This document shows positions 18,277 through 63,744 of a DNA stretch of 64,000 nt, piece after piece. The translations under genes and the position numbers were made by a program. The notes beneath the pieces were generated by a model. That model was not told the DNA's origin, searched no databases, and saw only the letters and a list, made by a program, of their open reading frames with translations. The stretch comes from Sphyrna mokarran (taxonomy: Eukaryota): the NCBI GenBank assembly GCA_024679065.1, contig JAGIQG010000009.1:102114001-102178000 (forward strand), read 5' to 3'. Positions within the stretch are counted from its first letter, which is position 1. Each line of letters opens with the position of its first letter.

Positions 18277-18349
18277 ATGTACGGAACAAGACATTGCTCT
18301 CAATTTACCGATGTTTTCTTGCTCACCGGTTGCTTCATATTCCTCTGCG
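18277..18349 (+). CDS. Exon 1 (signal peptide) of an IgSF type-I membrane receptor: MYGTRHCSQFTDVFLLTGCFIFLC
   Basis: ATG at 18277, hydrophobic leader, strong donor G|GTAAGT at 18350 in phase 1, matching the phase-1 acceptor of the V exons; promoter-like motifs lie just upstream. Confidence 0.8.
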
Positions 18350-18589
18350 GTAAGTTTACATCTTTTTGTTTCATATCCTCCATCAGGGTCATTCTGTCTC
18401 GGAGTTCCCTGTCTGTCTGCCTGTGTGTGTGTGTTGGAGCTGGGAATTCAGCCCTCGCTGATCTATAGTGGATGAAACTCAGCTATTTCTTCATATCTTC
18501 ATTCTCCTTCAGTTTGAGAGCAGAGATATTCGGTGACACTTTCTATCTCGACACACTTATACCGACTAGCATGTGTTCCAGACCCTCAA

Positions 18590-20875
18590 ATTATAACTGG
18601 GATTTAATAATGTATTAACTGAACCCTCTGACTGTAGCTGAGATTTAATAATGAGTTAACTGGACCCTCTGACTATAGCTGGGATTTGATAATGAGTTAA
18701 CTGGACTCTTTAACTGTAGCTGAGATCTAATGATGAGTTAACTGGACCCTTTAACTGTAGCTGGGATTTAATAATGAGTTAACTGGACCCTTTAACTGTA
18801 GCTGAGATCTAATAATCAGTTAACTGGACCCTCTGACTGTAGCTGGGATTTGATAATGAGTTAACTGGACCCTCTAACTGTAGCTGGGATTTAATAATGA
18901 GTTAACTGGACCCTCTGACTGTAGCTGGGATTTAATAATGAGTTAACTGGACCCTGTAACTGTAGCTGGGATTTAATAATGAATTAACTGGACGCTTTAA
19001 CTGTAGCTGGGATTTAATAATGAGTTAACCGGACCCTGTAACTGTAGCTGGGATTTAATAATGAGGTAACTGGAACCTTTAACTGTAGCTGAGATCTAAT
19101 AATCAGTTAACTGGACCCTCTGACTGTAGCTGGGATTTAATAATGAGTTAACTGGACCCTCTGACTAGCTGGGATTTAATAATGAGTTAACTGGACCCTC
19201 TCACTGTAGCTGGGATTTAATAATGAGTTAACTGGACCCTGCAACTGTAGCTGGGATTTAATAATGAGTTAACTGGACCCTGTAACTGTAGCTGGGATTT
19301 AATAATTAGTTAACTGGACCCTCTAACCGTAGCTGGGATTTAATAATGAGTTAACTGGACCCTGTAACTGTAGCTGGGATTTAATAATGAGTTAACTGGA
19401 CCCTGTAACTGTAGCTGGGATTTAATAATGAGTTAACTGGACCCTCTCACTGTAGCTGGGTTTTAGTAATGAGTTAACTGGACCCTCTGACTGTAGCTGG
19501 GATTTAATAATGAGTTAACTGGACCCTGTAACTATAGCTGGGTTTTAGTAATGAGTTAACTGGACCCTCTGACTGTAGCTGGGATTTAATAATGAGTTAA
19601 CTGGACCCTGTAACTGTAGCTGGGATTTAATAATGAGTTAACTGGACCCTGTAACTGTAGCTGGGATTTAATAATTAGTTAACTGGACCCTCTAACTGTA
19701 GCTGGGATTTAATAATGAGTTAACTGGACCCTGTAACTGTAGCTGGGATTTAATAATTAGTTAACTGGACCCTCTAACCGTAGCTGAGATTTAATAATGA
19801 GTTAACTGGACCCTGTAACTGTAGCTGGGATTTAATAATGAGTTAACTGGACCCTCTTACTGTAGCTGGGATTTAATAATGAGTTAACTGGACTCTATAA
19901 CTGTAGCTGGGATTTAATAATGAGTTAACTGGACCCTCTTACTGTAGCTGGGTATTAGTAATGAGTTAACTGGACCCTCTCACTGTAGCTGGGTTTTAGT
20001 AATGAGTTAACTGGACCCTCTGACTGTAGCTGGGATTTAATAATGAGTTAACTGGACCCTGTAACTGTAGCTGGGTTTTAGTAATGAGTTAACTGGACCC
20101 TCTGACTGTAGCTGGGATTTAATAATGAGTTAACTGGACCCTGTAACTGTAGCTGGGATTTAATAATGAGTTAACTGGACCCTGTAACTGTAGCTGGGAT
20201 TTAATAATTAGTTAACTGGACCCTCTAACTGTAGCTGGGATTTAATAATGAGTTAACTGGACCCTGTAACTGTAGCTGGGATTTAATAATTAGTTAACTG
20301 GACCCTCTAACCGTAGCTGGGATTTAATAATGAGTTAACTGGACCCTGTAACCGTAGCTGGGATTTAATAATGAGTTAACTGGACCCTGTAACTGTAGCT
20401 GGGATTTAATAATGAGTTAACTGGACCCTGTAACTGTAGCTGGGATTTAATAATGAGTTAACTGGACCCTCTTACTGTAGCTGGGTATTAGTAATGAGTT
20501 AACTGGACCCTCTCACTGTAGCTGGGTTTTAGTAATGAGTTAACTGGACCCTCTAACTGTAGCTGGGATTTGATAATGAGTTAACTGGACCCTGTAACTG
20601 TAGCTGGGATTTAATAATGAGTTAACTGGACCCTCTTACTGTAGCTGGGATTTAATAATGAGTTAACTAGACTCTATAACTGTAGCTGGGATTTAATAAT
20701 GAGTTAACTGGACCCTCTTACTGTAGCTGGGTTTTAGTAATGAGTTAACTGGACCCTCTAACTGTAGCTGTCATTTAGTAATGAACTAACTGGACCCTCT
20801 AATCGTAGCTCGATTTAATAATGAGTGAACTCGACCGTCAATTCGTAGCTTGATTTACTAATGACTTAACTCAGC
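18590..20875. repeat. 41-bp minisatellite, ~55 copies, consensus GAGTTAACTGGACCCTGTAACTGTAGCTGGGATTTAATAAT
   Basis: Head-to-tail units without spacers, degenerate at both ends, in intron 1. Confidence 0.97.
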
Positions 20876-22463
20876 CTCTCTCAAGTCTTTGATAATGTCA
20901 GATGTTCTTGAGTGGCAAGTTTTACAAAATTTCAACTTGGAAGAAATGGCTTTACAGAGGAATACCCTTGATTATTTTTTGAAAAAGAGTTTATTTAAAG
21001 CATTCAATGACAATTAGAGATGAGAAATAAATGTCCCTTCAATGAATAAAAAATACAAAACATTTCCACTTGAAAACTAGAGAATGTTCAAAAGCTCAAC
21101 TTGTCGGCATGTTGCACTCTTAACTCCCTCAATACAAACGTAATGCTTTCGATATTCTCAACGTACATTCCCCGTGAGGCTAACAATCTGAAGATAAAAC
21201 ATTTCAATTTGAAAAGTTATAACAAATGCAATGGAATTCACTTTTTTTTCTCCATACTGCATGTTCCACTCCGAATTGCTGGAGTATAATTTCAAACCCC
21301 TCAATAATTACAATCTATAATCCATGTCAGGCTCACACCCTGAGGGATTTGACAATCTATCCATCCACTCCATGCATTGTGGCTGTAAACATGAATGAAT
21401 AAAGAAAAATCAGAATGAGATTAGCACAAATATCTCAGGATTGTGGAGCTAGAGGAGATTACACAGATAGGGGTGAAAAGCCATGGAGGCAATTGAAAAT
21501 AAGGACGACAGTTTTAAATTTCCTTGATTGGGAGCCAGTGTTGGTCAGTGAAAACAGGGGCAACAACAAACAGGGATTCGCTGAAAATTAAGACATGGGC
21601 AGCAGAGTTTTTGATAAGTTTAAGCCAATGGAGGGTAGGTTATTGGAGACCAGCCAGGATAAGATGCAAGGGAGATATCCCTGGGACCCTGACTAATCGT
21701 TAATTCTCAGTCAGCATTATTCAGACATGATCACAAACGCTAGTTGTAGGATCTTACTGTTTGTAATTTGTTTGTGTTGTATTTCCTGAATGACAACAGT
21801 GATCAGAAACTGCTTATTATCAGCTGTAAAGGACTTGCAATACAGACAGTTTACAGATTACTGACTAGAATGAGAATCTTCACAACAGGTAAACTGTCTG
21901 TGCTGTTATATGCACTCTCTGAGGCCAGAGCTCTCCTTTCGCCTGGTGAAGGGGCAAACACCGAAAGCTTGCGAGTTTACTATCAAATAAATCGGTTGAA
22001 CTTAAACTTGGTGTTGTCAGACTTCTTATTGTGCAAGGCATTATACAGAGCCAAGTTAGAGTCTGTGGACAAGTTGCCTGTGGTGTTTGCTAGTTTTGAA
22101 GTGCAGTCATTGTTCTTTTGCCAACTAAAATAATTTTGGTTTGGCAGACAAAGGAAATAAAGGTGCGAAAGTGTAAATTCTCACAACCTCACTCTTTGAT
22201 GAAAATGGAGGTGTTTTGTAACTTTAAACTAATGGGAGTTAAGTCCTGACATTGTCAGCGGAATCAAATCAATTTGAGCTAAAGTCATATTGACTAGAAA
22301 TCATTCCCTCCTCACCAGCTCTGCCTGACTTGCTGAGTATTTCCAGCATTCTGTCCTTTTGTTTCAGATGTCCACCATCTGCAGTATTTGGAGCTTTAAT
22401 TTCATTGAGGGATAATCTAATCGAAATTGTTAAGGGATTGGCAGAAAAATGATTCCCTTAGGA

Positions 22464-23722: not shown

Positions 23723-23725
23723 AAC

Positions 23726-30559: not shown

Positions 30560-31731
30560 ACAGGAGAAAGAATGTAGGGGAGAGGTATATGACAAAGGGT
30601 AGAACTATTAAGAATATAGAAACGCAGAGGGACCTGGGGGGTGCAGGTCCACAAGTCTCTGAAGGTGACAGACAGGTGGAGAAGGTTGTGAAGAAAGCAT
30701 ATGGTACGTTAGCCTTTATAGGAAGGAGTATGGAGTACAAGAGCTGGCCTTTAATGTTGCAATTGTATAAAACGTTGGTTAGACCTCATTTCTGGTACTG
30801 CGTTCAGTTCTTGTCACCTTACTACTGGAAGGACGTGGAGACTCTGGAGAGAATGCAGAGGAGGTTTACCAAGATGCTGCCTGGTATGGAAGGTCTGAGT
30901 TACGAGGAAGGTAGGCAAATTGGGGCTGTTTTCCTTAGAAGGATGTAGACTTAGAGGAGATCTAATAGAGGTGTACAAGATTATGAGGGGTATAGATAGA
31001 GTAAATAGGGTTAAGCTTTTTCCTAGGATGGACTCAAATAGCACGAGGGGTCATGGGCTTAGGGTGAGGGGGGTAAGGTACAATTTGGATGCTAGAGGGA
31101 GTTTTTTCACACAGAGAGTGGTGGGGGTATGGAATGACTTCCAAATAAAGTAGTGGAGGCAGGCACTCTGGAGTTATTTCAGAGATACTCAGATGGGCAC
31201 ATGAACAGATGGGAATGGAGGGATAGAAAACTGATTTAAAATAGGGATCATGATGATGATATTGAGTGTTTTTATCGTACAGGTGCGTCGGTCCGCCTTG
31301 TTGTCTGACAAGGGGCATATACGCAATGGGTCATGAGAGGGCTGCTCTTGGATTTTTCGAGAGTATCCTAGTGCTTCACGTCGTTAGTGTATGCTTAACC
31401 TGGACCATTTGATGGGCAACACGACAGCTCAGTGACAATCGCTGTGCTGTGTAGATACATGGATTTGGGCCTGTGTCTGTGGGAGTTTGCGCATTCTCCC
31501 CGTGCTTGCGTGGGTTTTCTCCGGGTGCTCCGGTTTCCTCCCACATCCCAAAGATGTGCTCTTAGGCTAATTGGCAGAACAAATTCTCCCTAAATTGTCT
31601 CAAATTTGGTTTTAATCCATAGATCTATAAGCATAGACGAGGATCACGGGGAGAAGTTGGAACATCGAGGTGGCGGTGCAGGCTCATTGGGCTGAAGGCC
31701 CTGTTTCCCGTGCTGTTTTGTCCTTTGTTCT
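30560..31731 (+). mobile_element. CR1 family X 3' fragment (left boundary of the triplication)
   Basis: RT C-terminal motifs KAYGTLAFI, LVRPH, LFSLE, then a long 3' UTR ending in TTGTTCT repeats. Confidence 0.9.
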
Positions 31732-32607
31732 AGATTGCTAAATGTCAGAGTGATTTAGTTACTAGGTGGGTGATGTAATAACTAGTGAATGCCTCTCCAT
31801 TCTCAATACACAGGTCTTGGTTTTCTTTTATTTATTGAAGCCAATGGAAATTAGGATTGGGAGAGTTTTTTCTCATTCATTTGTCGGAAATAAGCATTAC
31901 TGGCTGGCCAGCATTTATTACCCATTCCTAATTGCTCTTGAGAAGGTGTAGTGAGCTGCCTTCTTGAACTGCTGCAGTTCACGTGCTGTGGATTTTCCCA
32001 TTAGGGAGGGAATTCCAGGATTTTGAGCCAGCAACTGAGATGGAACAGTGAAATATTTCCAAGTCAGGATAGTGAGTGGCTTGGAGGGAAACTTGCAGGT
32101 GGTGGTGTTGCTATATATTTGCTCCCCTTCTAGATGAAAGTGGTCTTCAGTTGGAAGGTGCTTTCTAAGGATTTTTGGTGAATTTCTGTTGAGTGGATCA
32201 CTAACACTGGTTTTAAAGTACCAATATTATATAAAGTCAAGTTCAACATGAAAATGCCTTTGATTTTTATCTCAGATTTTCAGATTGTTGCAGGCTTTAA
32301 TGTCAGACTTTTAATTGATCACAAGCTTACTCTTCATGTAACAAGCTGAGTAATAGAGTTCTCTTAAACAGTTATTTTAATACAAACTATAACAAGGACA
32401 TAGGGAGGGTACAGTTCACATCCCTGTAGCTAGCCAAAAGTGGTACATTCCAAGATACAAAGGCAATTAAAGTTTTCAAAATCGATTACAAGTAATTAGC
32501 ATAAACTAATCATAATCACTTTAAACTTGCTTCATTATAATATCCAATCAGTAAGAAAACTTCATGGTACAGCTCATTTCTGTATCTGTGGATCACTCCC
32601 ATTTTCT

Positions 32608-35423
32608 TTCCAAAAATATACTTTATTCATAAATTTCAAATAAACCATTTCAAAATTACATGTCTTGAATTGCAAAAGCAGTGCAGAATCCAAACGTTCA
32701 TACAGTTCTATACAAAGTGCATTCAAATCATTTCAAAACTTACTAACTCTACATGCCCCAAAAACCGCCGTGTACCGCCACTGCTCAGACCGGCGCACAG
32801 CAACCCCCTATTCCCAAAAAATATACTTTATTCATACAAACTCAAACAATCCTTCAAATTACATGAGTTTGTATTGCAAACAGTGCAGAACTAAAACAAA
32901 AACTTTTAAAATAATTCTACACAAATTACAATCATAACATGTCAGAACTTACAAATGTACACATGCTCAAAAATTACTGTGTGCCATTGTTGTTCAGATT
33001 GGCACAGTTACGCAGGCCGAGGGTATTCTGCAGTTCCCTCTGCAGGGCCTTGGATCTGCCTTTGTTAAAAGGCCTTATAGTGTGACCTTTTCCCATTGTG
33101 CCTTTGCGGCAGCTGTCCCAAGCTTCAGTGCCTCCCTCGCACGTAGTCCTGGACCTTGGAGTGTGCCAGTCTGCAACACTCGGTCGAGGACAGTTCTTTC
33201 AACTGGAAGATCAGCAAGTTTCAGGTGGACCAAAGTGCGTTCTTCACTGAGTTGATGACCTTCCAGCAGTAGTTGATATTCGTCTTGGTGTGTGAACCCG
33301 GAAACAGCCCGTAGAGCACAGAGTCCTGTGTCGTCAAGCTGATTGGGATGAACCTCGACAAATACCACTGCATCTCACTCCAGACTTCTTTGAAAGGCAC
33401 ATTCCACAAGGAGGTGTGCGACTGTCTCATCAGCCCAGCAGCCGCTTCGACAGCAGCGTGCGGTGCTGTTGAGACCTGGAGTGTGCATAAAGGATCTGAT
33501 GGGGAGTGCCCTTCTCACCAGCAGCCAAGCCAGATCTTGGTGCTTGTTTGTAAGTTCTGGTGATGAGGTGTTCTGCCAGATGACACTGACAGTTTGCTCA
33601 GGGAACCATCCGACAGGGTCCATCATCTCCTTTTCTCTCAGGACCTTAAGGACATTACGTGCTAACCACTGCTTAGTCGCCATGTAGTCAAAGGTGTGTT
33701 TGTGGAAACATTTCTCCGCGAAGGACAGGTGCTGTGGTACAGTCCAACGACTCGGAGCGTTCTGCAGCAGTGTGGCCAGACCCATTCCCCGTAATACTTG
33801 GGATAGGTACAACATCAAAAAGTAACGGCACTTGCTGTTGGTGTACCGAGGATCTACGCACAGCTTGATGCAGTCACACACAAAGGTGGCCATCAGGATG
33901 AGAGTGGCGTTGGGAACATTTTTCCCTCTGTTCTCTGGAGATTTGTGCATCGCCTCCCTCTGGACGCAATTCATCTTGGATCCCCAGATGAACTTGAAGA
34001 TGGCCTGCGTCACTGCTGCAGCACAGTATCTGGGGATAGGCCACACCTGCACCATGTACAACAACACGGACAGCACCTCGCACCGGATCACCAGTTTTTC
34101 CCTGTGATGGAGAGGGAGTGTAACTCCCACCAGCCCAATTTCTTCCTGGCTTTCGCGATGCGCTCGTCCCAGTTTTCAGTGCATGCCCCTGCCGCTCCAA
34201 ACCATATCCCCAGTACCTTGGATTTGTCTGCCCAGTTCCCAAAGAACATGGTCTTGTTCTTACCTGGTTGACTTGGCTCCTGAGGCCAGCTCGAACTGCT
34301 CACAGACCTGGAGGAGCCTGCGAACAGACGAACGGTCCGAGCAGACAGCCACGTCATCCATGTACAGGGAGGCTTTAACCTGTGTGCCTCCGCTGCCTGG
34401 GATTGTCACCTCTTTGATGCCTGGGTCGCTTCTTAGGGCCTCAGCAAGGGTTCAATGCAACACACAAAAAGGACGGAGGAGAGAGGGCAGCCCTGTCTGA
34501 CTCCAGACCTGATTTGGAAGCTATCTGACTCCCACCCATTGACTGAAACTGCGCTACTGATGTATGTGTAGAGCAGCTGGATCCAATTGCGGATACCCTC
34601 CCTGAAACCCATTTTGGAGAGCACATCCATCCTGTTGCGATGCGAAATTCTGTCAAACGCCTTCTCCTGGTCTAGGCTGATGAGGCAAGTATCCACCCGC
34701 CTGTCCTGCACGTAGGCGATTGTATCCCCGAGTAGTGTGAGGGTATCAGAGATCTTCCTGCCGGGTACAGCACAGGTTTGATCAGAATGGATCACTGACC
34801 CCAGAGCAGATTTGACCCGGTTGGCTAGATGATTTTGGCTAGAATTTTGTAATCCGTGTTCAATAGTGAAATGGGTCGCCAATTTCTAATTTCTTCCCTT
34901 TCCCCCTTTGCTTGTAGATGAAGGTGATGATGATGCCTTTCCTCATGGATTCTGACATCCTGACTTCCAGAAGCATACTCTCGTATACTTCCAGGAGGTC
35001 TGGGCCCGTCAAGTCCCACAACGCCGAGTAAAACTCAGCCGGTAAGCCATCCCTTCCAGGAGTTTTACCCTTCTGAAGGGACTCGACGGCCTTCGTCACT
35101 TTGTCCAGAGATACCGGTCTGTCCAAGTCTGACCGGTCTAAGAACTGCGCGATAGACAACAGGAAAGACTGGAGGCCGTGCTGTCTGTTCGCTTCAGGTC
35201 GTACAGTCCGGCATAGAAGGATTTCCAGATCCTCAGAATGTCAGAGTGTGATGACCTTACCGAGCCGTCTTCTTCCTTCAGGCTGCTGATCATAGAGGTT
35301 TCTCTGTGTACCTTCTGGAAGAAGAAACACAAGCACTTTTCATCCTGTTCCACAGAGGGGACGCTGGACCGGAAGATGAACTTGGCAGCCTCCGAGGCAA
35401 ACAGCGAGGCTTGCTGGCTCTTC
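32608..35423 (-). mobile_element. Tx1-clade (L1 group) LINE, 5'-truncated and frameshifted, copy A
   Basis: KTPGRDGLPAEFY, NWRPISLLN, DQEKAFD, GVRQGCPLS, YMDD, C-terminal CCHC; AATAAA and A-rich tail; TSD ATCACTCCCATTTTCT at 32592-32607 and 35424-35439. Confidence 0.92.
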
Positions 35424-35876
35424 ATCACTCCCATTTTCTAATTACAGATGTCTGATTTATGTGCTTTGCCAGACTAAAGACCTTGTTGTCTGTCTGTGAT
35501 GACTCTTATAAGAAGACCTTTGTTTTTCAGCCTGTGCGATTTTTAAACTTCTGTGACTACTAACCCTTCCACAGACCATTCTATTCCTTTCCCCGTGTGG
35601 GATTACTGTGTATTCTATTTCCCTCCCCCTTGTTCTCTTTCTATTCAATGCTGCACTTTCTACAATATCTCAGCAGTAATACGGCTTCCTCTGGGAGCTC
35701 CAGTTTCCTCCCACAGCCTGAGAAACATGCTGGTTAGGTGCACTGCCCATGCTAAATTCTCCACTTGTCTCAGTTCACTCCCATTTCTCCTTTTGTGCAG
35801 AGTTTAATTTATTGGTGGGAGAAACACTGTCAAATGTGACTGAAAACTAATTCACTTTTCCTTTCTGTTCATGCAG

Positions 35877-36269
35877 CCTCAGGAAGCAGTCTTACAGTGA
35901 CAGTCCATCAGACAGAAGTGAATGGAACAGTGAAGCAGTCTGTCCTTCTCCCTTTACGCTACTCCACTTCTACAAACTACTCCATTTTAAGGTTATACTG
36001 GAGTTTATTTCCCAGAAACACTCCATTTGTGAAGCTGACCCGATCAAACTGCTCTCCAGACCCTGACGGATCTGGGTATAACTGTTCAGATCGCCTGATG
36101 ATAACTCCTTCCTACCGGGACCGAATTCACCTCCATCCAGAGAATGGATCCTTGTTACTGTGGAATGTACAGTCCAATGATAGCGGCATCTATGTGTTCT
36201 CTGTTTATGATGATGATGCGGGCGCAATCAGGAAAGGCAATGTGACTCTAACAGTCTATAACAGAACAG
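35877..36269 (+). CDS. Ig V-set exon copy 1 (CD2/SLAM/CEACAM-N/HEPACAM-like, no B-F disulfide)
   Basis: Branch-like AACTAAT, polypyrimidine tract and CAG acceptor; AG|GTAAGA donor; 393 nt, phase 1-1, open; motifs VNGTVKQSVLLP, W in strand C, YRDRIHLHPENGSLLL, DSGIY, GNVTLTV. Confidence 0.9.
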
Positions 36270-36589
36270 GTAAGAATTCACAATCTCCTTATTAAACTTT
36301 TCCTTCCAGAAAGGGGATTCTGGGAAATTAGTTAAAACTGTTTCAAACTACTGAAGTTCCCGAAAGGCCTTCAGTAAGATACCAGATATGAGCTTGATGA
36401 GAAATGTGAGAAGATATGGGGCAGGTGTGTAAAATGTCTTTCCCACCTCCTACCGTGGCTGAAATGAGAATTCTCCTCCATGAACTGATCACATACAATC
36501 ATACCACTGGGCCGCCGCTCGCCAAGGGCCGGGCCGCCGCTCGCCGAGGGCCGGGCCGCCGCTCGCCGAGGGCCGGGCCGCCGCTCGCC

Positions 36590-37652
36590 AAGGAATACAA
36601 GTATAGGTATCTAGATGGATAAGTAACTGGCTTGGTAATAGGAGAAAGAGAGTAATAGTGTAGGGTGTTTTTCTAGCTGGAGGTTGGTCAATAGTGGTGT
36701 GCTGCAGGGCTTGGTACTGGGACCTCTTCTATTTGTAATATATATAAATGACTTGGAGGAGGGAGTAAGTGGAGTGATCAGCAAGTTTGCTGATGACATA
36801 AAGATGACTGGACTTGCGGATAGTGAGGAGTTTTGTCAGGTGATGCAGCAGCACATAGATAGGCTGGTAGCTTGGGCAGATAGATGGCAGATGGAATTCA
36901 ATCCTGATAAATGTGAGGTGATGCATTTCAGGAGAAAGAATGTAGGGGAGAGGTATATGATAAAGGGTAGACCTATTAAGAGTATAGAAACGCAGAGGGA
37001 CCTGGGGGTGCAAGTCTTTGAAGGTGGCAAAGCAAGTGGAGAAGGTTGTGAAGAAAGCATATGGTATGCTAACCTTTATAGGAAGGGGCATAGAGTACAA
37101 GAGCTGTTTAAAGTTGTAGTTGTATAAAACATTGGTTAGACCTCATTTGGAATACTGCGTCTAGTTCTGGTCGCCTTACTACTAGAAGGACATGGAGACT
37201 CTGGAGAGAGTGCAGAGGAGGTTTACGAAGATGCTGCCTGGTATGGAAGGGTCATGAGAGGGCTGCTCTTGGACTTTTCGAGAGTATCCTAGTGCTTCAC
37301 GTCGTTAGTGTATGCTTAACCTGGACCATTTGATGGGCAACACGACAGCTCAGTGACTATCGCTGTGCTGTGCAGATACATGGATTTGGGCCTGTGTCTG
37401 TGGGAGTTTGCATATTCTCCCTGTGCTTGCGTGGGTTTTCTCTGGGTGCTCCGGTTTCCTCCCACATCCCAAAGATGTGCTCTTAGGCTAATTGGCAGAA
37501 CAAATTCTCCCTAAATTGTCTCAAATTTGGTTTTAATCCATAGATCTATAAACATAGACAAGGATCACGGGGAGAAGTTGGAACATCGAGGTGGCGGTGC
37601 AGGCTCATTGGGCTGAAGGCCCTGTTTCCCGTGCTGTTTTGTTCTTTGTTCT
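36590..37652 (+). mobile_element. Chimeric CR1 family X copy at junction A/B (~430 bp missing)
   Basis: RT fragment (SGVLQGLVLGP, FADD) joined directly to the 3' UTR at 37250. Confidence 0.85.
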
Positions 37653-38528
37653 AGATTGCTAAATGTCAGAGTGATTTAGTTACTAGGTGGGTGATGTAAT
37701 AACTAGTGAATGCCTCTCCATTCTCAATACGCAGGTCTTGGTTTTCTTTTATTTATTGAAGCCAATGGAAATTAGGATTGGGAGAGTTTTTTCTCATTCA
37801 TTTGTGGGACATAGGCATTACTGGCTGGCCAGCATTTATTACCCATCCCTAATTGCTCTTGAGAAGGTGTAGTGAGCTGCCTTCTTGAACTGCTGCAGTT
37901 CACATGCTGTGGACTTTCCCATTAGGGAGGGAATTCCAGGATTTTGAGCCAGCAACTGAGATGGAACAGCGAAATATTTCCAAGTCAGGATAGTGAGTGG
38001 CTTGGAGGGAAACTTGCAGGTGGTGGTGTTGCTATATATTTGCTCCCCTTCTAGATGAAAGTGGTCTTCAGTTGGAAGGTGCTTTCTAAGGATTTTTGGT
38101 GAATTTCTGTTGAGTGGATCACTAACACTGGTTTTAAAGTACCAATATTATATAAAGTCAAGTTCAACATGAAAATGCCTTTGATTTTTATCTCAGATTT
38201 TCAGATTGTTGCAGGCTTTAATGTCAGACTTTTAATTGATCACAAGCTTACTCTTCATGTAACAAGCTGAGTAATAGAGTTCTCTTAAACAGTTATTTTA
38301 ATACAAACTATAACAAGGACATAGGGAGGGTACAGTTCACATCCCTGTAGCTAGCCAAAAGTGGTACATTCCAAGATACAAAGGCAATTAAAGTTTTCAA
38401 AATCGATTACAAGTAATTAGCATAAACTAATCACAATCACTTTAAACTTGCTTCATTATAATATCCAATCAGTAAGAAAACTTCATGGTACAGCTCATTT
38501 CTGTATCTGTGGATCACTCCCATTTTCT

Positions 38529-42194: not shown

Positions 42195-42473
42195 GTAAGA
42201 ATTCACAATCTCCTTATTAAACTTTTCCTTCCAGAAAGGGGATTCTGGGAAATTAGTTAAAACTGTTTCAAACTACTGAAGTTCCCGAAAGGCCTTCAGT
42301 AAGATACCAGATATGAGCTTGATGAGAAATGTGAGAAGATATGGGGCAGGTGTGTAAAATGTCTTTCCCACCTCCTACCGTGGCTGTACTGAGAATTCTC
42401 CTCCATGAACTGACCACATACAATCATGCCACTCCGGGCCACCGCTCGCCGAGGGCCGGGCCGCCGCTCGCCA

Positions 42474-43533: not shown

Positions 43534-44398
43534 AGATTGCTAAATGTCAGAGTGATTTAGTTACTAGGTGGGTGATGTAATAACTAGTGAATGCCTCTCC
43601 ATTCTCAATACACAGGTCTTGGTTTTCTTTTATTTATTGAAGCCAATGGAAATTAGGATTGGGAGAGTTTTTTCTCATTCATTTGTGGGACATAGGCATT
43701 ACTGGCTGGCCAGCATTTATTACCCATCCCTAATTGCTCTTGAGAAGGTGTAGTGAGCTGCCTTCTTGAACTGCTGCAGTTCACATGCTGTGGACTTTCC
43801 CATTAGGGAGGGAATTCCAGGATTTTGAGCCAGCAACTGAGATGGAACAGCGAAATATTTCCAAGTCAGGATAGTGAGTGGCTTGGAGGGAAACTTGCAG
43901 GTGGTGGAGTTGCTATATATTTGCTCCCCTTCTAGATGAAAGTGGTCTTCAGTTTCTAAGGATTTTTGGTGAATTTCTGTTGAGTGGATCACTAACACTG
44001 GTTTTAAAGTACCAATATTATATAAAGTCAAGTTCAACATGAAAATGCCTTTGATTTTTATCTCAGATTTTCAGATTGTTGCAGGCTTTAATGTCAGACT
44101 TTTAATTGATCACAAGCTTACTCTTCATGTAACAAGCTGAGTAATAGAGTTCTCTTAAACAGTTATTTTAATACAAACTATAACAAGGACATAGGGAGGG
44201 TACAGTTCACATCCCTGTAGCTAGCCAAAAGTGGTACATTCCAAGATACAAAGGCAATTAAAGTTTTCAAAATCGATTACAAGTAATTAGCATAAACTAA
44301 TCACAATCACTTTAAACTTGCTTCATTATAATATCCAATCAGTAAGAAAACTTCATGGTACAGCTCATTTCTGTATCTGTGGATCACTCCCATTTTCT

Positions 44399-47228
44399 TT
44401 CCAAAAATATACTTTATTCATAAATTTCAAATAAACCATTTCAAAATTACATGTCTTGAATTGCAAAAGCAGTGCAGAATCCAAACATTCATACAGTTCT
44501 ATACAAAGTGCATTCAAATCATTTCAAAACTTACTAACTATATACATGCCCCAAAAACCGCCGTGTACCGCCACTGCTCAGACCGGCGCACAGCAACCCC
44601 CTATTCCCAAAAAATATACTTTATTCATACAAACTCAAACAATCCTTCAAATTACATGAGTTTGTATTGCAAACAGTGCAGAACTAAAACAAAAACTTTT
44701 AAAATAATCCTACACAAATTACAATCATAACATTTCAGAACTTACAAATGTACACATGCTCAAAAATTACTGTGTGCCATTGTTGTTCAGATTGGCACAG
44801 TTACGCAGACCGAGGGTATTCTGCAGTTCCCTCTGCAGGGCCTTGGATCTGCCTTTGTTAAAAGGCCTTATAGTGTGACCTTTTCCCATTGTGCCTTTGC
44901 GGCAGCTGTCCCAAGCTTCAGTGCGTCCCTCGCACGTAGTCCTGGACCTTGGAGTGTGCCAGTCTGCAACACTCGGTCGAGGACAGTTCTTTCAACTGGA
45001 AGATCAGCAAGTTTCGGGTGGACCAAAGTGCGTTCTTCACTGAGTTGATGACCTTCCAGCAGTAGTTGATATTCGTCTTGGTGTGTGAACCCGGAAACAG
45101 CCCATAGAGCACAGAGTCCTGTGTCGTCAAGCTGCTTGGGATGAACCTCGACAAATAACTTCATCTCACTCCAGACTTCTTTGCAAAGGCACATTCCACA
45201 AGGAGGTGTGCGACTGTCTCATCAGCCCAGCAGCCGCTTCGACAGCAGCGTGCGGTGCTGTTGAGACCTGGAGTGTGCATAAAGGATCTGATGGGGAGTG
45301 CCCTTCTCACCAGCAGCCAAGCCAGATCTTGGTGCTTGTTTGTAAGTTCTGGTGATGAGGTGTTCTGCCAGATGACACTGACAGTTTGCTCAGGGAACCA
45401 TCCGACAGGGTCCATCATCTCCTTTTCTCTCAGGACCTTAAGGACATTACGTGCTAACCACTGCTTAGTCGCCATGTGGTCAAGGGTGTGTTTGTGGAAA
45501 CATTTCTCGGCGAAGGACAGGTGCTGTGATACAGTCCAACTACTCGGAGTGTTCTGCGGCAGTGTAGCCAGATCCATTCCCCGTAATACTTGGGACAGGT
45601 ACAACATCAAAAAGTAACTGCACTTGCTGTTGGTGTACTGAGGATCTACGCACAGCTTGATGCAGTCACACACAAAGGTGGCCATCACGATGAGGGCGGC
45701 ATTGGGAACATTTTTCCCTCTGTTCTCTGGAGATTTGTCCATCGCCTCCCTCTGGATGCGATTCATCTTGGATCCCTAGATGAACTTGAAGATGGCCTGC
45801 GTCACTGCTGCAGCACAGTATCTGGGGATAGGCCACATCTGCGCCATGTACAACAACACGGTCAGCACCTCGCACCGGATCACCAGGTTTTTCCCTGTGA
45901 TGGAGAGGGAGTGTGACTCCCACCAGCCCTATTTCTTCCTGGCTTTCGCGATGCGCTCATCCCAGTTTTCAGTGCATGCCCCTGCCGCTCCAAACCATAT
46001 CCCCAGTACCTTGGATTTGTCTGCCCAGTTCCCAAAGAACATGGCCTCACTCTTACCCTGGTTGACTTTGGCTCCCGAGGCCAGCTCAAACTGCTCACAG
46101 ACCTGGAGGAGCCTGCGAACAGATGAAGGGTCCGAGCAGAAGACAGCCACTAAATTCCATGTACAGGGAGGCTTTTATCTGCATACCTTCACTGCCTGGA
46201 ATTGTCACCCCTTTGGTGCCTGGGTCCCTTCTTAGGGCCTTGGCAAGGGGTTCAATGCAACACACAAAAAGGACGGAGGAGAGAGGGCAGCCCTGTCTGA
46301 CTCCAGACCTGTTTTGAAAACTATCTGATTCCCACCCATTGACTGAAACTGCGCTATAGATGTCTGTGTAGAGCAATCGGATCCAATTGCGGATACCCTC
46401 CCCAAAACCGATTTTGGAGAGCACATCCCTCATGTTGCAGTCCGAAATTCTGTCAAAAGCCTTCTCCTGGTCTGGGCTGATGAGGCAGATATCCACCCGC
46501 CTGTCCTGCACGTAGGCGATCGTATCCCTGAGTAGTGCGAGGCTATCAGACACCTTCCTGCCGGGTACAGCACAGGTTTGATCAGAATGGATCACCGACC
46601 CCAGAGCAGATTTGACCCGGTTGCCGATGATTTTGGCTAAGATTTTATAATCCACATTCAATAGTGAAATTGGTCGCCAATTTCGAACTTCTTCCCTTTC
46701 CCCCTTTGCTTGTAGATGAAGGTGATGATGATGCCTTTCCTCATGGATTCTGACATCCTGCCTTCCAGAAGCATACTCTCATATACTTCCAGGAGGTCTG
46801 GACCCGTCAAGTCCCTCAACGCCAAGTAAAACTCAGCCGGTAAGCCATCCCTTCCAGGAGTTTTACCCTTCTGAAGGGACTCGACGGCCTTCGTCAGCTT
46901 GTCCAGAGATACCGGTCTGTCCAGACTGTCCTGCTCACCGTCATCTAAGACCTGCGCGATAGACGACAGGAAAGACTGGGAGGCCGTGCTGTCTGTTGGC
47001 TTCAGGTCATACAGTCCAGCATTGAAGGATTCCCAGATCCTCAGAATGTCAGACTGTGATGATCTTACCGAGCCGTCTTCTTCCTTCAGGCTGCTGATCA
47101 CAGAGGTTTCTCTGTGTACATTCTGGAAGAAGAAACAAGCACTTTTTGTGCTGTTCCACAGAACGGACTCTGGACCTGAAGATGACTTGGCGGCCTCCGA
47201 GGCAAACAGCGAGGCTTGCTGGCTCTTC
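44399..47228 (-). mobile_element. Tx1-clade LINE, copy C (duplicated with the unit)
   Basis: Same ends and TSD (44383-44398, 47229-47244). Confidence 0.92.
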
Positions 47229-47701
47229 ATCACTCCCATTTTCTAATTACAGATGTCTGATTTATGTGCTTTGCCAGACTAAAGGCCTTGTCGTCTATCT
47301 GTGAAGACTCTTATCAGAAGACCTTTGTTTTTCAGCCTGTGAGATTTTTAAACTTCTGTGACTACTAACCCTTCCACAGACCATTCTATTCCTTTCCCCG
47401 TGTGGGATTACTGTGTATTCTATTTCCCTCCCTCTTGTTCTTTTTCTATTCAATGCTGCACTTTCTACAATATCTCAGCAGTAATACGGCTTCCTCTGGG
47501 AGCTCCAGTTTCCTCCCACAGCCTGAGAAACGTGCTGGTTAGGTGCACTGCCCATGCTAAATTCTCCACAGAGTTGCCTCATTTTCCACTTGTCTCAGTT
47601 CACTCCCAATTCTCCTTTTGTGCAGAGTTTAATTTACTGGTGGGGGAAACACTGTCAAATGTGACTGAAAACTAACTCACTTTTCCTTTCTGTTCATGCA
47701 G

Positions 47702-48094
47702 CCTCAGGAAGCAGTCTTACTGTGACAGTCCATCAGACAGAAGTGAATGGGACAGTGAACCAGTCTGTCCTTCTCCCTTTACCCTACTCCACTTCTACAA
47801 ACTACTCCATTTTAAAGTTACGCTGGAGATTATTTCCCAGAAACACTCCACTTGTGACGCTGACCCGATCAAACTGCTCTCCAGACCCTGATGGATCCCA
47901 GTATAACTGTTCAGATCGCCTGATGATAACTGTTTCCTACCAGGACCGAGTTCACCTCTATCCAGAGAATGGATCCTTGTTACTGCGGAATGTACAGTCC
48001 AATGACAGCGGCGTCTATGTGTTCTCTGTTTATGATGATGATGCGGGCACAACCAGGATAGGCAATGTGACTCTAATAGTCTATAACAGGACAG
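47702..48094 (+). CDS. Ig V-set exon copy 3 (most divergent)
   Basis: Same splice signals (branch AACTAAC); 18 aa differences from copy 1; open frame, phase 1-1. Confidence 0.9.
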
Positions 48095-48371
48095 GTAAGA
48101 ATTCACAACCTCCTTATTAAACTTTTCCTTCCAGAAAGGGGATTCTGGGAAATTAGTTACAACTGTTTCAAACTAATGAAGTTCCCGAAAAGCCTTCAGT
48201 AAGATACCAGATATGAGCTTGATGAGAAATGTGAGAAGATATGGGGCAGGTGTGTAAAATGTCTTTCCCACCTCCTACCCTGGCTGTACTGAGAATTCTC
48301 CTCCATGAACTGACCACATACAATCATACCACTGGGCCACTGCTCGCCGAGGGCCGGGCCGCCGCTCGCTG

Positions 48372-49877
48372 AGGAATACAAGTACAAGTAGCTAGATGGA
48401 TAAGTAACTGGCTTGGTAATAGGAGACAGAGAGTAATAGTGAAAGGGTGTTTTTCCAGCTGGAGGTCGGTCAATAGTGGTGTGCCGCAGGGCTCGGTACT
48501 GGGACCTCTTCCATTTGTAATATATATACATGACTTGGAAGAGGGAGTAAGTGGAGTGATCAGCAAGTTTGCTGATGACATAAAGATGGCTGGACTTGCG
48601 GATAGTGAGGAGCATTGTCAGGCGATGCAGCAGGACATAGCAGGTACCTTGGGCAGATAGATGGCAGATGGAATTCAATCCTGATAAATGTGAGGTGATG
48701 CATTTCGGGAGAAATAATGTAGGGAAGAGGTATATGATAAAGGGTAGACCTATTAAGAGTATAGAAATGCAGAGAGACCTGGGTGTGCAAGTCTTTGAAG
48801 GTGGCAGAGCAAGTAGAGAAGGTTGTGAAGAAAGCATATGATATGCCAGCCTTTATAGGAAGGGGCATAGAGTACAAGAGCTGTTTAATGTTGCAGTTGT
48901 ACAGAACATTGGTTAGACCTCATTTGGAATACTGCGTCCAGTTCTGGTCGCCTTACTACCGGAAGGATGTGGAGACTCTGGAGAGAGTGCAGAAGTACCC
49001 GGATGCTGCCTGGTATGGAAGGTCTGAGTTATGAGGAAAGGTTAGGTAAATTGGGCTGTTTTCTTTAGAAAGACAGAGACTGAGAGGAGATCTAATAGAA
49101 GTGTACAAAATTATGAAGGGTATAGATAGAGTAAACAGGGTTAAGCTTTTTCCTATGTTAGAATCAAATATCACAAGAGGCCGTGGGCTTAGGGTGAGGC
49201 TGGCAGGGTATAATTTGGATGTAAGATGATTATGGGGTATGCAACGCACTGCCAAGTAAGGTGGTGGAGGCAGGCATGCTGGAGTTATTTACGAGATACT
49301 TAGGCACATGAGTGGAATAGGGATGGAGGGATATGGTAGACTGATTTAAGTAGGGATCATGAGCCTTGGGACATTCCTGGGAATTGCATAAGTTATGCAT
49401 GATGTTGATGTATTTCTGCTATTATCCTACTGGTACTTCGGTCCGCCTTGTTGCCTAACAAGGGGCATACATGCGATGGGTTGTGAGATGGCTGCTCTTG
49501 GATTTTTTGAGAGTAGCCTATTGCTTCACATCATTAGTGTATGCTTAAACTGGACCAGTTGATGGGCAACACGACATCTCAATGACTATCATGTTGCTGT
49601 GCAGATACATGGATTTGGCCCAGTATCTGTGGGAGTTTGCGCATTCTCCCCGTGCTTTTCTCCGGGTGCTCCAGTTTCCTCCCACATCCCAAAGATGTGC
49701 TCTTAGGCTGATTGGTGAAACAAATTGTCCCTAAATTGTCTCCCCAATTTAGTTCCAATGCATATTTCCGTAAACATAGACAAGGGTCATGGGTGGAAGT
49801 GGGAACGTTAAAATGGCAGCGCGGGCTCGTTGGGCTGAAGGTCCTGTTTCCCGTGCTGTGTTGCTCTTTGTTCTTTG
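48372..49877 (+). mobile_element. CR1 family X copy (right boundary of the triplication)
   Basis: GVPQGSVLGP, FADD and LVRPHLEYC motifs followed by the complete family X 3' UTR. Confidence 0.9.
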
Positions 49878-59799: not shown

Positions 59800-59946
59800 A
59801 CAGTGTGACTTCTAGCCCAACACATACAAGCCCAACAACTGACATGAATAAAGTCAAAAATATCGGTGTCCCTGCTGCTACTGCTGCTGTGAGTCTCCTC
59901 GTTATTCTCATCTGCTTGTACTTGGTGCAGACCAGGAAACACACAG
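59800..59946 (+). CDS. Stalk plus transmembrane exon: DSVTSSPTHTSPTTDMNKVKNIGVPAATAAVSLLVILICLYLVQTRKHT
   Basis: TTGTTTTGTTACAG acceptor, AG|GTATGT donor, 147 nt, phase 1-1; S/T/P-rich stalk, ~22-aa hydrophobic helix, basic stop-transfer RKH; absent from the ORF track. Confidence 0.85.
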
Positions 59947-61624: not shown

Positions 61625-61913
61625 AATGTATTTATTAGCATGACAAGTTGGCTTACATTAACGCTGCAATGAAGTTACTGTGAAAATCCCCTAGTTGCCA
61701 CAGTTCGGGTACACTGGGGAGAATTTAGCATGGTCAATCCACCTAACCCATACGTCTTTCAGACTATGGGAGGAAACCAGAGTACCCAGTGGAAACTCAT
61801 GCTGACACTGGGAGAACATGCAGGGTCCACATAGACAGTGACCCAGGGAATCGAACCCAGGTCCCTGGCACTGCGAGGTAGCAGTGCTAACCACTGCACC
61901 ACCATGCCGCCCA
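61625..61913 (-). mobile_element. V-SINE
   Basis: Head GGGCGGCATGGTGGTGCAGTGGTTAGCAC on the minus strand; same tail as 1016-1297. Confidence 0.85.
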
Positions 61914-62335: not shown

Positions 62336-62764
62336 ACACTAACCATTGCTATTTATTGATTTTCACCTACAGTAGTAATTTGTATAACTGCTCGTGCATT
62401 AATGATTTACAGAGCTTGGCACCATGAGTTTGCATATTTACAATGTCCATGATACTTCTAAGATCTAAAAAAAGAATTACATCACTAATGTATGTCAAAT
62501 TTATTGGCCAACAGGGAGATTTAATTTGGGGTTTTCTGAACTCTCACCAATTTTTTTGTGTGTTTTCAAATAATGCATGCACAATAATGTAGGATGATTT
62601 CATCAACCTCCTGGAAGTTCTGACAATCTGGCTGGACCTTGTTTCCTTTTACAGATTTTAAATATCAGTGTAAACTCAAGGATTGGGGCTTTGGTGTCTG
62701 TAATTAACCAATCACGTTCTCAGACAATGCTCTTCATGGTGAAGGAATCAAAATAAATCAAATT

Positions 62765-63538
62765 ACTAATGCATTTTGCAAGGTCCAATACAGATGGGAA
62801 ATATACAGTAAATGGCAGAACCATTAAGAGTATTGGTAGGCAAAGGGATCTAGATATACAAGTACACAGGTCACTGAAAGTGACAATGCAGATAGTCAAG
62901 AAGGCATACGGCATGCTTACCTTCGTTGGCCAAGACACTGAGTTTAAAAATTGACAAATCATGTTGCAACTTTATAGAACCTTAGTTAAGCCCCACTTGA
63001 AATGTTCAATTCTAGTTGCCTCATTACCAGAAGGATGCAGAGGCTTGGGAGAGGTTACAGAAAAGATTTACCAGAATGGTCCCTGGTGTGGAGGGCATTA
63101 GCTATGAGAAAAGGTTGGAGTAACTTGGTTTGTTCTCAATGATACGATGACGGTTGAAGGGAGCAAATTGATAGAAATCTACAAAATTATGAGAGGCATG
63201 GACAGAGTGGAGAGTCAGAAACTTTTTCTCAGAGCGAAAAAGTCAATTATTAGGCACAGGTTTAAGGTGCAAGGAGCAAGATTTAAAGAAGATGTACAAA
63301 GCAAGTATTTTTACACACAGGGTGGTGGGTGTCTGGAATTCGCTGCCAGGGAGATAGTGAAAGCAAATACGATAGTGACTTTTAAGGGGTGTCTGGACAA
63401 ATATATGAATAGGATGTGAATGGAGGGATATGGTCCCTGGAAGGGTAGGGGGTGTTAGTTCAGTCAGGCAGCATGGTCTTTGCAGGCTTGGAGGGCTGAA
63501 GGGCCTGTTCCTGTTCTGTAACTTTCTTTGTTCTTTGA
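62765..63538 (+). mobile_element. CR1 3' fragment
   Basis: MHFARSN, RDLDIQVHRSLK, KAYGML, IYKIMRGMDRV; TTTGTTCTTTG tail. Confidence 0.85.
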
Positions 63539-63688
63539 ACTAAATACAAAATTGGAGCTGGCGGTGTCCAATTTAAAAGCATTAGCAAGCTCTTTCTGTT
63601 GTCTCTTCATCATGTTTTACATAGATTTGCATTTTATCTTTCACACAGTATAAACAATTCTGTTACTAACGTGAGTGTTTCAATTCAG

Positions 63689-63744
63689 GTTGCCAGCAGC
63701 AACAGGATTCGGCTCTCATGGAAACATCTGTTCAGCCTATTGAG
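63689..63744 (+). CDS. First cytoplasmic exon: GCQQQQDSALMETSVQPIE (gene continues beyond window)
   Basis: Perfect TACTAAC branch point 63664-63670, TTCAG acceptor, GAG|GTAAGA donor; phase 1 to 0 and open when joined to the TM exon. Confidence 0.75.

What the first reader, a model, noticed from the sequence alone, without database searches (positions are those of the whole stretch)
18277..63744. Spliced IgSF receptor gene with a tandem array of interchangeable V exons (L-V1-V2-V3-stalk/TM-cyt)
Seen: six exons with consensus splice sites and matching phases give one open frame, 485 codons with all V exons or 223 with one, still open at the window end. All three V exons are 393 nt, phase 1-1, with intact splice signals, so any subset can be spliced in frame between the single leader and single TM exon. 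I found no C2 exon between V3 and TM. Known: CD2/SLAM/HEPACAM proteins are normally V plus C2, and CEACAM/SLAM N domains are pathogen-driven. Inference: a lineage-specific shark immune or adhesion receptor that expanded by exon duplication rather than gene duplication. It would give either a V-V-V ectodomain or cassette/mutually exclusive V choice onto a shared TM and tail, a germline diversification mode independent of RAG.
Basis: partly seen in the sequence, partly recalled or inferred. Interest (0 to 1): 0.9.

Follow-up and report, generated by a model that had tools for sequence, protein, structure and literature searches.

The report
Shark receptor gene, V exon triplicated
This is a real shark cell-surface receptor gene whose single binding-domain exon was recently copied into three tandem copies, a way of growing already known in the related CEACAM/PSG gene families, and nothing yet shows that the copies are used as alternatives.

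Summary
I read all six exons in the window. tblastn with the closest annotated relative, a 280-aa single-V protein of Mustelus asterias, finds each of them.

The three 393-nt V exons lie in a 5.9-kb tandem triplication that also carries LINE debris. The middle unit is a clean recombinant of the outer two, as one unequal crossover would leave.

All three V exons stay open and keep the family's conserved residues. Their differences avoid conserved columns (P=0.006) and lean towards the C, C', C'', F and G strands (P=0.036).

The lack of a C2 exon is normal for this family. Its elasmobranch members are L-V-TM-tail proteins of about 250-305 aa.

Serial multi-V proteins made by exon duplication are already described for rodent PSGs and reptile CEACAMs (PMC10440875, PMC13278318). 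Annotated relatives in a stingray, a duck and a frog show the same.

I found no feature that would enforce an either-or choice of V exon. No RNA run was listed, so exon usage is untested.

Interest is moderate to low: a new member of a known kind.

The parts
18277..18349 (+). Leader exon: ATG plus 24 codons and 1 base, donor gtaagt, phase 1
   Evidence: Read. It matches residues 1-24 of the Mustelus asterias protein P0004, 18 of 24 identical by my count of the printed alignment (tblastn E 4e-8).
31328..37248 (+). Tandem unit U1 of the 5.9-kb triplication
   Evidence: Self-blastn: 31328-36549 against 37249-42476 is 98.45% identical; against 43131-48374 it is 95.2%. Three-way alignment.
33375..35434 (-). 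Decayed LINE fragment inside U1 (copies in U2 at 39291-41359 and in U3 at 45161-47239). It was duplicated together with the V exon.
   Evidence: ORF list. The U2 copy hits Pfam RVT_1 (1.4e-25) and zf-RVT (4.2e-9).
33607..33686 (.). Switch point of the recombinant middle unit, in U1 coordinates. Upstream of it U2 matches U3; downstream U2 matches U1.
   Evidence: Odd-one-out pattern of 280 variable columns.
35877..36269 (+). V1 exon, 393 nt, phase 1-1, V-set domain
   Evidence: AlphaFold model with mean pLDDT 91.3 and V-set strands.
37249..43130 (+). Tandem unit U2, a recombinant: 5' part like U3, 3' part like U1
41802..42194 (+). V2 exon, 393 nt. It differs from V1 at 6 nt: 3 synonymous, plus R72W and M74V.
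43131..49028 (+). Tandem unit U3. Its 3' 3.6 kb is about 6% diverged from U1 and U2.
47702..48094 (+). V3 exon, 393 nt. It differs from V1 at 27 nt and 18 amino acids, and carries a ninth N-glycosylation sequon (N19).
59800..59946 (+). Ser/Thr/Pro-rich stalk, transmembrane helix and stop-transfer exon, 147 nt, phase 1-1
   Evidence: Hydrophobicity scan, reading, tblastn to P0004 residues 155-209 with E 4e-9.
63689..63744 (+). First cytoplasmic exon, 56 nt, phase 1-0, donor gtaaga. The reading frame is still open, and the tail exons lie beyond the window.
   Evidence: Reading. tblastn to P0004 from residue 207, E 4e-5.

Best explanation
The window holds the 5' two-thirds of this shark's copy of an elasmobranch-wide gene for a small type I membrane receptor. 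The gene has a leader exon, one CEACAM/CD2-like V domain without the canonical disulfide but with a C-x10-C clamp, a stalk/TM exon, and a cytoplasmic tail that carries an ITIM and a second tyrosine motif in the orthologues. In this lineage a 5.9-kb piece of intron holding the V exon and LINE debris was duplicated in tandem. Much later, one unequal crossover between the two units added a third, recombinant unit. All three V exons keep frame, phase and identical splice signals. The default product is therefore most likely a V-V-V ectodomain on one TM and tail, with exon-skipped shorter isoforms possible, as in other multi-domain IgSF genes. Shown here: the exons, their homology, the triplication, its recombinant structure, and the constraint on all three copies. 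Inferred: serial inclusion of the exons, an inhibitory function (the tail is outside the window), and diversification of a ligand-binding face.
For: The exons and phases were read directly. All six exons are found by the Mustelus orthologue P0004. Relatives exist in at least 15 elasmobranch species, most as 250-305 aa single-V proteins with conserved 'ELTYSLLQW' and 'ETIYAF' tail motifs. The triplication is shown. Both unit junctions are the same (37249 and 43131 both correspond to 31328), and the odd-one-out pattern switches once at 33607-33686, which fits a single unequal crossover. There is evidence of constraint. No stop or indel has appeared in any copy although the surrounding noncoding DNA is about 6.3% diverged; under neutrality P(no stop) is about 0.29 and P(no indel) about 0.15. 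Only 1 of 20 columns that vary among V1-V3 falls in the 38 columns invariant in 11 outgroup proteins, against 5.8 expected (P=0.006). Of the 20 variable positions, 12 lie on the C, C', C'', F and G strands, against 7.8 expected (P=0.036). Of these 12, 11 have the strand parity opposite to the conserved core residues, by my reading. For serial use: the V-to-V junction keeps the frame, and annotated relatives are serial multi-V proteins. These are Hypanus sabinus XP_059827191.1 with an 88-aa exact V repeat, Anas acuta XP_068553178.1 with six V domains 72-91% alike, and a Leptobrachium protein with five. The published CEA-family cases are rodent PSGs with 3-8 N domains, CEACAM11-14 with two N domains only, and tuatara CEACAM1L4 with three N domains only (PMC10440875 passages; PMC13278318 section 11).
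Against: There is no transcript evidence at all: no RNA run was listed, so read laying could not be used. No protein from the window's own species was found in the databases. The multi-V relatives are pipeline predictions whose RNA support I could not see, and the Hypanus model is visibly ragged, with two partial V domains. dN/dS between V1 and V3 is about 1.1 (NG86), which alone would also fit relaxed constraint. The triplication could not be checked against reads. The inhibitory tail is inferred from orthologues only.
Confidence: 0.6

Rival explanations
1. Cassette or alternative V usage. Transcripts carry one V exon, or varying subsets, so that one gene gives receptors with different binding faces on a shared TM and tail. 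The strict form is mutually exclusive choice.
For: All three exons are symmetric (phase 1-1) with identical splice signals, so any subset stays in frame. V1/V2 and V3 differ at 18-20 amino acids, weighted towards the C, C', C'', F and G strands. Exon-skipping isoforms are common in related genes: twelve CEACAM1 splice variants in a rattlesnake (PMC13278318, section 11), and several isoforms of differing length among the bird relatives.
Against: Nothing enforces exclusivity. Double inclusion keeps the frame, the introns between V exons are about 5.5 kb, and all sites are GT-AG. The only complementarity between a site upstream of every V exon and a site in intron 1 is a SINE-like core, which matched at 18 further places outside the three V-flank copies, on both strands. 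V1 and V2 differ by only two residues, so a 'repertoire' would hold barely two specificities. There are no RNA data.
Confidence: 0.2
2. Only one V exon is used, and the other copies are silent by-products of a segmental duplication that have not yet decayed.
For: The duplication took intron and LINE debris along, so it was not selected exon by exon. The V1-V2 flanks are nearly identical, hence young. Overall dN/dS is about 1.
Against: V3 and V1/V2 are about 6-7% apart, yet both are intact (joint neutral probability about 0.04). Their differences avoid conserved columns (P=0.006). The splice signals are unchanged in all three, so the spliceosome has no evident reason to skip two of them.
Confidence: 0.1
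3. The middle unit is an assembly artefact, for example two haplotypes of one segment placed in tandem. The true array then has two V exons.
For: U2 is exactly a 5'-U3 / 3'-U1 mosaic. A false duplication of the segment [3' part of U1 + 5' part of U3] would look the same. The two copies differ by only 0.6-1.7%. I could not check read depth.
Against: There are no N runs in the window. The same mosaic is what a real unequal crossover gives. The copies differ at 91 mismatched positions and in 112 gap columns, including patches of about 6% difference, which would be a lot for two haplotypes of one segment. Even if this were true, two diverged V exons would remain, so the core of the finding stands.
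Confidence: 0.1

Closest known systems
Mustelus asterias LOC144496850 (XP_078073544.1, 280 aa) and its elasmobranch orthologues (Scyliorhinus, Carcharodon, Cetorhinus, Heterodontus, Heptranchias, Hemiscyllium, Chiloscyllium, Stegostoma, rays). All are 'uncharacterized protein' in NCBI.
   Same: Same exon plan: leader, V, stalk/TM, short cytoplasmic exon. The V domain is 70% identical and the leader nearly so. It also has the C-x10-C pair, no canonical cysteines, and dense N-glycosylation sequons.
   Different: These proteins have one V domain; the window has three V exons. Their ITIM-bearing tails are visible, whereas here the tail lies beyond the window.
Multi-N-domain members of the CEA family: rodent PSGs (3-8 N domains plus one A domain), CEACAM11-14 (two N domains), tuatara CEACAM1L4 (three N domains only), gecko CEACAM1L1 (N-N-N-C-C)
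   Same: An IgV-like domain without the canonical disulfide is multiplied by tandem duplication of the V exon within one gene and read in series. The families evolve fast and differ between lineages (PMC10440875 passages; PMC13278318 section 11).
   Different: Most of those are secreted or keep an IgC domain. Here the protein is TM-anchored with, by homology, an inhibitory tail and no IgC domain. Membership of the CEA family is not established for this gene.
CEACAM1 (inhibitory, ITIM/ITSM)
   Same: The N domain lacks the disulfide. The best single-sequence PDB matches are CEA and CEACAM6. The TM exon is followed by a short first cytoplasmic exon whose length is not a multiple of 3: 56 nt here, against a 53-bp exon in CEACAM1 (PMC13278318, section 11). 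The orthologues' tails have two tyrosine motifs.
   Different: There are no IgC domains. The leader is not split one third into the V exon. The profile search puts JAML and CD276 ahead of the CEACAMs. Close bird relatives are abundant in ducks, which that preprint says lack complete CEACAM genes.
Hypanus sabinus XP_059827191.1 ('CEACAM3-like'), Anas acuta XP_068553178.1 ('CEACAM5-like isoform X6'), Leptobrachium leishanense A0A8C5R4T6
   Same: They are relatives of the same V domain (54%, 37% and 34% identity) and are annotated as serial V-V-... proteins with one TM. The V-V junction of the stingray model is of the same short form as predicted here.
   Different: These are independent duplications in other lineages. 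They are pipeline models, not shown transcripts.

Membership tests
Immunoglobulin V-set domain (Pfam PF07686) | Profile match above the curated cut-off and a V-type beta sandwich with C' and C'' strands | tested here: met
   35.5, 34.9 and 31.8 bits against a cut-off of 26. AlphaFold model with pLDDT 91.3 and strands A, A', B, C, C', C'', D, E, F, G. Foldseek finds V domains only, with TM-scores up to 0.81.
CEA family (CEACAM/PSG) | N-terminal IgV-like domain without the canonical B-F disulfide | tested here: met
   The only cysteines are C58 and C69. F107 stands at the F-strand position where I expect the canonical cysteine; that placement is my reading, not a tool result.
CEA family (CEACAM/PSG) | CEACAM N domains are the closest sequence relatives | tested here: inconclusive
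   With the single sequence against PDB, CEA (3.7e-8) and CEACAM6 (1.3e-5) rank first, mostly by summed weak stretches. With the family profile, JAML (3.6e-10) and CD276 come ahead of CEACAM6 (2.6e-8). NCBI's automatic names vary between CEACAM3-like, CEACAM5-like, HEPACAM-like and 'uncharacterized'.
CEA family (CEACAM/PSG) | [quoted passage not shown] | tested here: inconclusive
   The leader exon holds 24 codons. The V exon begins (A)SGSSLTV, so at most a few leader residues lie in it. I did not predict the cleavage site.
CEA family (CEACAM/PSG) | Location in the syntenic CEA locus (LIPE, BCL3, TOMM40 and others) | not testable with these tools
CEA family (CEACAM/PSG) | Relatives in other classes are the genes that specialists call CEACAM | tested here: inconclusive
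   Bird relatives are numerous in Anas. PMC13278318 (section 11) reports no complete CEACAM gene in Galloanserae. This speaks against membership, but I did not compare the sequences themselves.
CD2/SLAM family | A membrane-distal V domain followed by a C2 domain | tested here: not met
   No C2 exon in the window or in the orthologues.
Mutually exclusive exon cluster (Dscam type or vertebrate MXE pairs) | A mechanism that forbids joint inclusion: frameshift with NMD, steric hindrance from a short intron, U2/U12 incompatibility, or docking and selector RNA pairing | tested here: not met
   393 nt is a multiple of 3. The introns between V exons are about 5.5 kb. All sites are GT-AG. The one candidate docking/selector pairing, 23 nt, is part of a high-copy SINE-like core. 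The list of mechanisms is recalled, not taken from a paper read here.
Variable first-exon arrays (clustered protocadherins, UGT1A) | Each variable exon has its own promoter, start codon and signal sequence | tested here: not met
   The V exons begin at acceptor sites in phase 1, with an in-frame stop just upstream. The only leader match is at 18277. The defining feature is recalled.

The most novel reading that the evidence does not exclude
The three V exons are used as regulated alternatives. L-V1/2-TM and L-V3-TM isoforms, perhaps specific to cell type, would put two different ligand-binding faces on one inhibitory tail, so that exon duplication within one gene does what paired or duplicated receptor genes do elsewhere. 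The excess of V1-V2 differences inside the exon (6 in 393 nt, against 0 in the 1,190 flanking nt) would then mark ongoing diversifying selection or patchy gene conversion.
Probability: 0.15. Interest if true: 0.6.

Novelty: new member of a known kind. Interest (0 to 1): 0.35.

Why it matters
The locus gives a clean, datable example in a cartilaginous fish of how IgSF receptors gain domains. A repeat-flanked intron segment with its V exon is duplicated, and an unequal crossover then adds a third, recombinant unit. The copies stay intact and differ mostly on one sheet of the domain. It also draws attention to an elasmobranch-wide family of single-V receptors with ITIM-bearing tails and an unusual C-x10-C hairpin. 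Databases list this family only as 'uncharacterized', and my three paper searches found no study of it. It does not, on present evidence, reveal a new way of generating receptor diversity.

Tried and rejected
RNA evidence. The look-up of sequencing runs with the V3 exon (kind rna) listed no run, so read laying was never called. Expression, exon usage and copy number by read depth are all untested.

The window's own species. No protein from it was found with P0004 as query (154-490 aa range), with the V1 exon (72-228 aa range, no hit), or with P0012 region 1-200 (207-660 aa range). This is no evidence of absence.

The exon differs at 27 of 393 positions (6.9%), against 196 of 3,121 (6.3%) in the noncoding DNA of the same unit part (Fisher p=0.66). 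It holds only against the nearest +-500 bp (38 of 955, p=0.035) and not against +-1000 bp (p=0.35). I do not count this as shown.

V1 versus V2. All 6 differences in a 1.58-kb span lie in the exon. But I chose that span after seeing the data, and over the whole 3' part the exon rate (1.5%) equals the noncoding rate (1.7%, p=1.0). U1-U2 differences come in patches in general.

Docking/selector pairing for mutually exclusive splicing. A 23-nt complement lies between a site about 170 nt upstream of each V exon and 23891-23913 in intron 1. It turned out to be the core of a SINE-like repeat that matched at 18 further places in the window on both strands. Rejected.

Fold-level family assignment. Foldseek against PDB gives generic V-set neighbours: VCBP3, PD-L1, CAR, Nav beta subunits, CD84 and CD48. 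It does not discriminate between families.

Self-blastp of the multi-V relatives returned nothing. I replaced it with motif splitting and pairwise alignment.

A search for hidden Ig exons between V3 and the TM exon found none. Of 24 open segments of 75 aa or more, I sent 10 to Pfam. I judged the other 14 by eye to be transposon-derived or to overlap tested segments, and did not send them.

Papers. I made three searches. I read passages of PMC3628338, PMC4079198, PMC5112662 and PMC10440875, and passages plus the whole of section 11 of PMC13278318. I opened no supplements. The supplementary sequence lists of these CEACAM papers, and the little-skate ESTs named in PMC3628338, could show whether this family is what they call cartilaginous-fish CEACAM.

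Full report
**What is there**

The window has no N runs.

- The leader exon is 18277-18349: an ATG, 24 codons and one base, with donor gtaagt.
- The three V exons are 35877-36269, 41802-42194 and 47702-48094. Each is 393 nt, preceded by ...ttcatgcag and followed by gtaaga, and each is in phase 1-1.
- The exon at 59800-59946 is 147 nt, in phase 1-1, and encodes a Ser/Thr/Pro-rich stalk, a 21-residue hydrophobic helix and a basic stop-transfer.
- The exon at 63689-63744 is 56 nt, ends in phase 0 and has donor gtaaga.

The exon lengths add up to 485 codons with three V exons, or 223 with one. Every search was made exon by exon, and the joined step was left out.

**It is a real gene**

Each V exon reaches Pfam V-set above the curated cut-off. 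A full HMMER scan of 1.84 billion representatives with V1 gave 317 proteins at E<=0.001.

- The best single-V hits are elasmobranch proteins of about 200-300 aa. The closest is Mustelus asterias XP_078073544.1 (P0004, 280 aa, 70% identity), followed by proteins of Scyliorhinus, Hemiscyllium and several rays.
- A word-index search with P0004 added Scyliorhinus torazame, Carcharodon, Heterodontus, Cetorhinus, Heptranchias, Chiloscyllium and others. Nearly all of these are 250-305 aa with one V domain.
- tblastn of P0004 against the window found the leader, the three V exons, the TM exon and the cytoplasmic exon, in order, and nothing else credible.
- The orthologues run leader, V, stalk/TM, tail with no C2 domain. 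Their tails carry a conserved ELTYSLLQW motif, which fits the ITIM consensus quoted in PMC13278318 section 11, and an ETIYAF motif. That part of the gene lies beyond the window.
- Of 24 stop-free + strand segments of 75 aa or more between V3 and the TM exon, I sent 10 to Pfam and none had a hit. The other 14 looked transposon-derived or overlapped the tested ones.

**The V exons sit in a segmental triplication**

Self-comparison shows three tandem units of about 5.9 kb: 31328-37248, 37249-43130 and 43131-49028.

- Each unit carries, besides the V exon, a decayed LINE on the minus strand (RVT_1 and zf-RVT) and a LINE 3' fragment on the plus strand at its end.
- The array is bounded by two direct copies of the same repeat, 81-83% alike. 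Both internal junctions are identical, so the third unit arose by homologous exchange between existing units and not by a new breakpoint.
- The odd-one-out pattern at 280 variable columns is clear-cut. Upstream of 33607-33686 (U1 coordinates) U2 goes with U3; downstream U2 goes with U1. One unequal crossover between two older units leaves exactly this pattern.
- In the 3' 3.6 kb, which holds the exon, U3 differs from U1 at 196 of 3,121 noncoding positions (6.3%). In the 5' 2.4 kb all three units are within about 1%, so some homogenisation has also occurred.

**State of the three copies**

V1 and V2 differ at 6 nt: three synonymous changes, plus R72W and M74V. V3 differs from each of V1 and V2 at 27 nt, which is 18 amino acids against V1.

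- dN/dS for V1-V3 is 1.13 (NG86). dN (0.075) is close to the noncoding divergence (0.066).
- Taken alone that would fit neutrality, but the pattern of changes is not neutral. Only 1 of the 20 columns that vary among V1-V3 falls in the 38 columns invariant in 11 outgroup proteins, against 5.8 expected (P=0.006).
- No copy has a stop or an indel. By simulation P(no stop) is 0.29, and from 17 noncoding indel events P(no indel) is 0.15.
- Using the outgroups to infer the direction of change shows derived changes on both the V1/V2 and the V3 lineages.
- An AlphaFold model built on a 50-sequence alignment is confident (pLDDT 91.3) and is a V-set sandwich with a long C'-C'' hairpin clamped by C58 and C69.
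- Of the 20 variable positions, 12 lie on the C, C', C'', F and G strands, against 7.8 expected (P=0.036). By my reading, 11 of these 12 have the strand parity opposite to the conserved core residues, so they should point outward. I could not reach the model coordinates to measure exposure.
- There are 8 N-glycosylation sequons in V1 and V2 and 9 in V3.
- The earlier scan note on the atypical V domain (s1-887665) is confirmed. The note that the exon is more diverged than its intron (s1-887611) holds only against the nearest 500 bp (p=0.035). It fails against the same-age noncoding DNA as a whole (p=0.66).

**How it most likely works**

All three exons have the same strong splice signals, and a V-to-V junction keeps the frame. 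I found nothing that would forbid joint inclusion.

- The exon length is a multiple of three, the introns between V exons are about 5.5 kb, and every site is GT-AG.
- One 23-nt complementarity links a site upstream of each V exon to a site in intron 1. It is part of a SINE-like core that matched at 18 further places in the window.
- The V exons have no leader or start codon of their own, so this is not a variable first-exon array.
- The default expectation is therefore a V-V-V ectodomain, with skipped isoforms possible.

Relatives support this reading.

- A stingray model (Hypanus sabinus XP_059827191.1) has V repeats with an 88-aa exact repeat and the same short V-V junction.
- A duck model has six V domains 72-91% alike.
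- A frog protein has five V domains.
- These are pipeline predictions, and the stingray model is ragged.
- In print, rodent PSGs have three to eight N domains, grown in part by exon duplication, and CEACAM11-14 have two N domains only (PMC10440875, passages).
- The tuatara CEACAM1L4 has three N domains only, and a gecko CEACAM has N-N-N-C-C (PMC13278318, section 11).
- In Xenopus, runs of N exons were counted as one gene (PMC5112662, passage).

**Family**

The domain resembles CEACAM, CD48 and 2B4 N domains at the sequence level, but weakly. A family profile ranks JAML and CD276 ahead of the CEACAMs, and the fold search is generic.

- Features like CEACAM1: no canonical disulfide, a TM exon followed by a short frame-changing cytoplasmic exon (56 nt here, 53 bp in CEACAM1 according to PMC13278318), and two tyrosine motifs in the orthologues' tails.
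- Points against membership: no IgC domain, a leader that is not split in the CEACAM way, and abundant duck relatives, although that preprint finds no complete CEACAM gene in ducks.
- Synteny could not be tested.
- I therefore call it CEACAM1-like in design and leave membership open.
- Cartilaginous-fish CEACAMs in the papers I read rest on little-skate ESTs (PMC3628338 and PMC4079198, passages). I could not compare those, and I did not open the supplements.

**What could not be done**

No RNA run was listed, so there is no evidence on expression or exon usage. There was also no read-depth check of the triplication.

A false duplication of the middle unit cannot be excluded (about 0.1). Even then, two V exons about 7% apart would remain.

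**Verdict**

The gene is real and the triplication is very probably real.

It is unsupported in its main claim, that the V exons are interchangeable or mutually exclusive as a diversification system.

This is a new member of a known kind, namely CEA-like IgSF genes that multiply their V exon. It sits in a family that is itself uncharacterised. Interest is 0.35.

Noticed in passing
window 18581-20871: A 41-bp minisatellite with 56 copies and 91% matches fills 2.3 kb of intron 1, starting 230 bp after the leader exon.
   Followed up: no
window 18072-18260: A 26-bp repeat (also read as a 104-bp period, 7 copies) ends 17 bp before the start codon, so the likely 5' UTR or promoter is itself repetitive.
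   Followed up: no
window 24136-27563, minus strand: A LINE with long open frames lies in intron 1: a 181-aa GDSL-esterase-like ORF, a 235-aa AP-endonuclease ORF and a 754-aa RT ORF. GC skew is strongly negative there. It looks young.
   Followed up: partly
window 35683-35772 and 18 further matches (e.g. 1107-1187, 12936-13009, 22584-22658, 61718-61848): A SINE-like core of about 80-90 bp occurs on both strands throughout the window. One copy lies about 170 nt upstream of each V exon.
   Followed up: partly
window 53080-54325 and 54626-55894: Two 1.2-kb arms, 82% alike, lie in inverted orientation about 300 bp apart, with related 0.3-kb pieces at 10687-11384. A 240-aa stop-free segment at 54808-55527 (+) overlaps one arm; its 219-aa ORF 54871-55530 has no Pfam hit.
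   Followed up: no
window 36092-36098 (V1) and the matching sites in V2: The V2-specific changes are three substitutions within 7 nt (R72W, M74V). V1/V3 also differ by four adjacent double substitutions within single codons. This may point to short conversion tracts or multi-nucleotide mutations.
   Followed up: no
P0012 (Mobula birostris XP_072115140.1) and P0172 (Amblyraja radiata): Two annotated ray relatives seem to run from the TM region into transposon-derived sequence. By eye, the P0012 tail resembles LINE RT-tail ORFs of this window, and P0172 carries Pfam RVT_1. These are probably mis-annotations.
   Followed up: no
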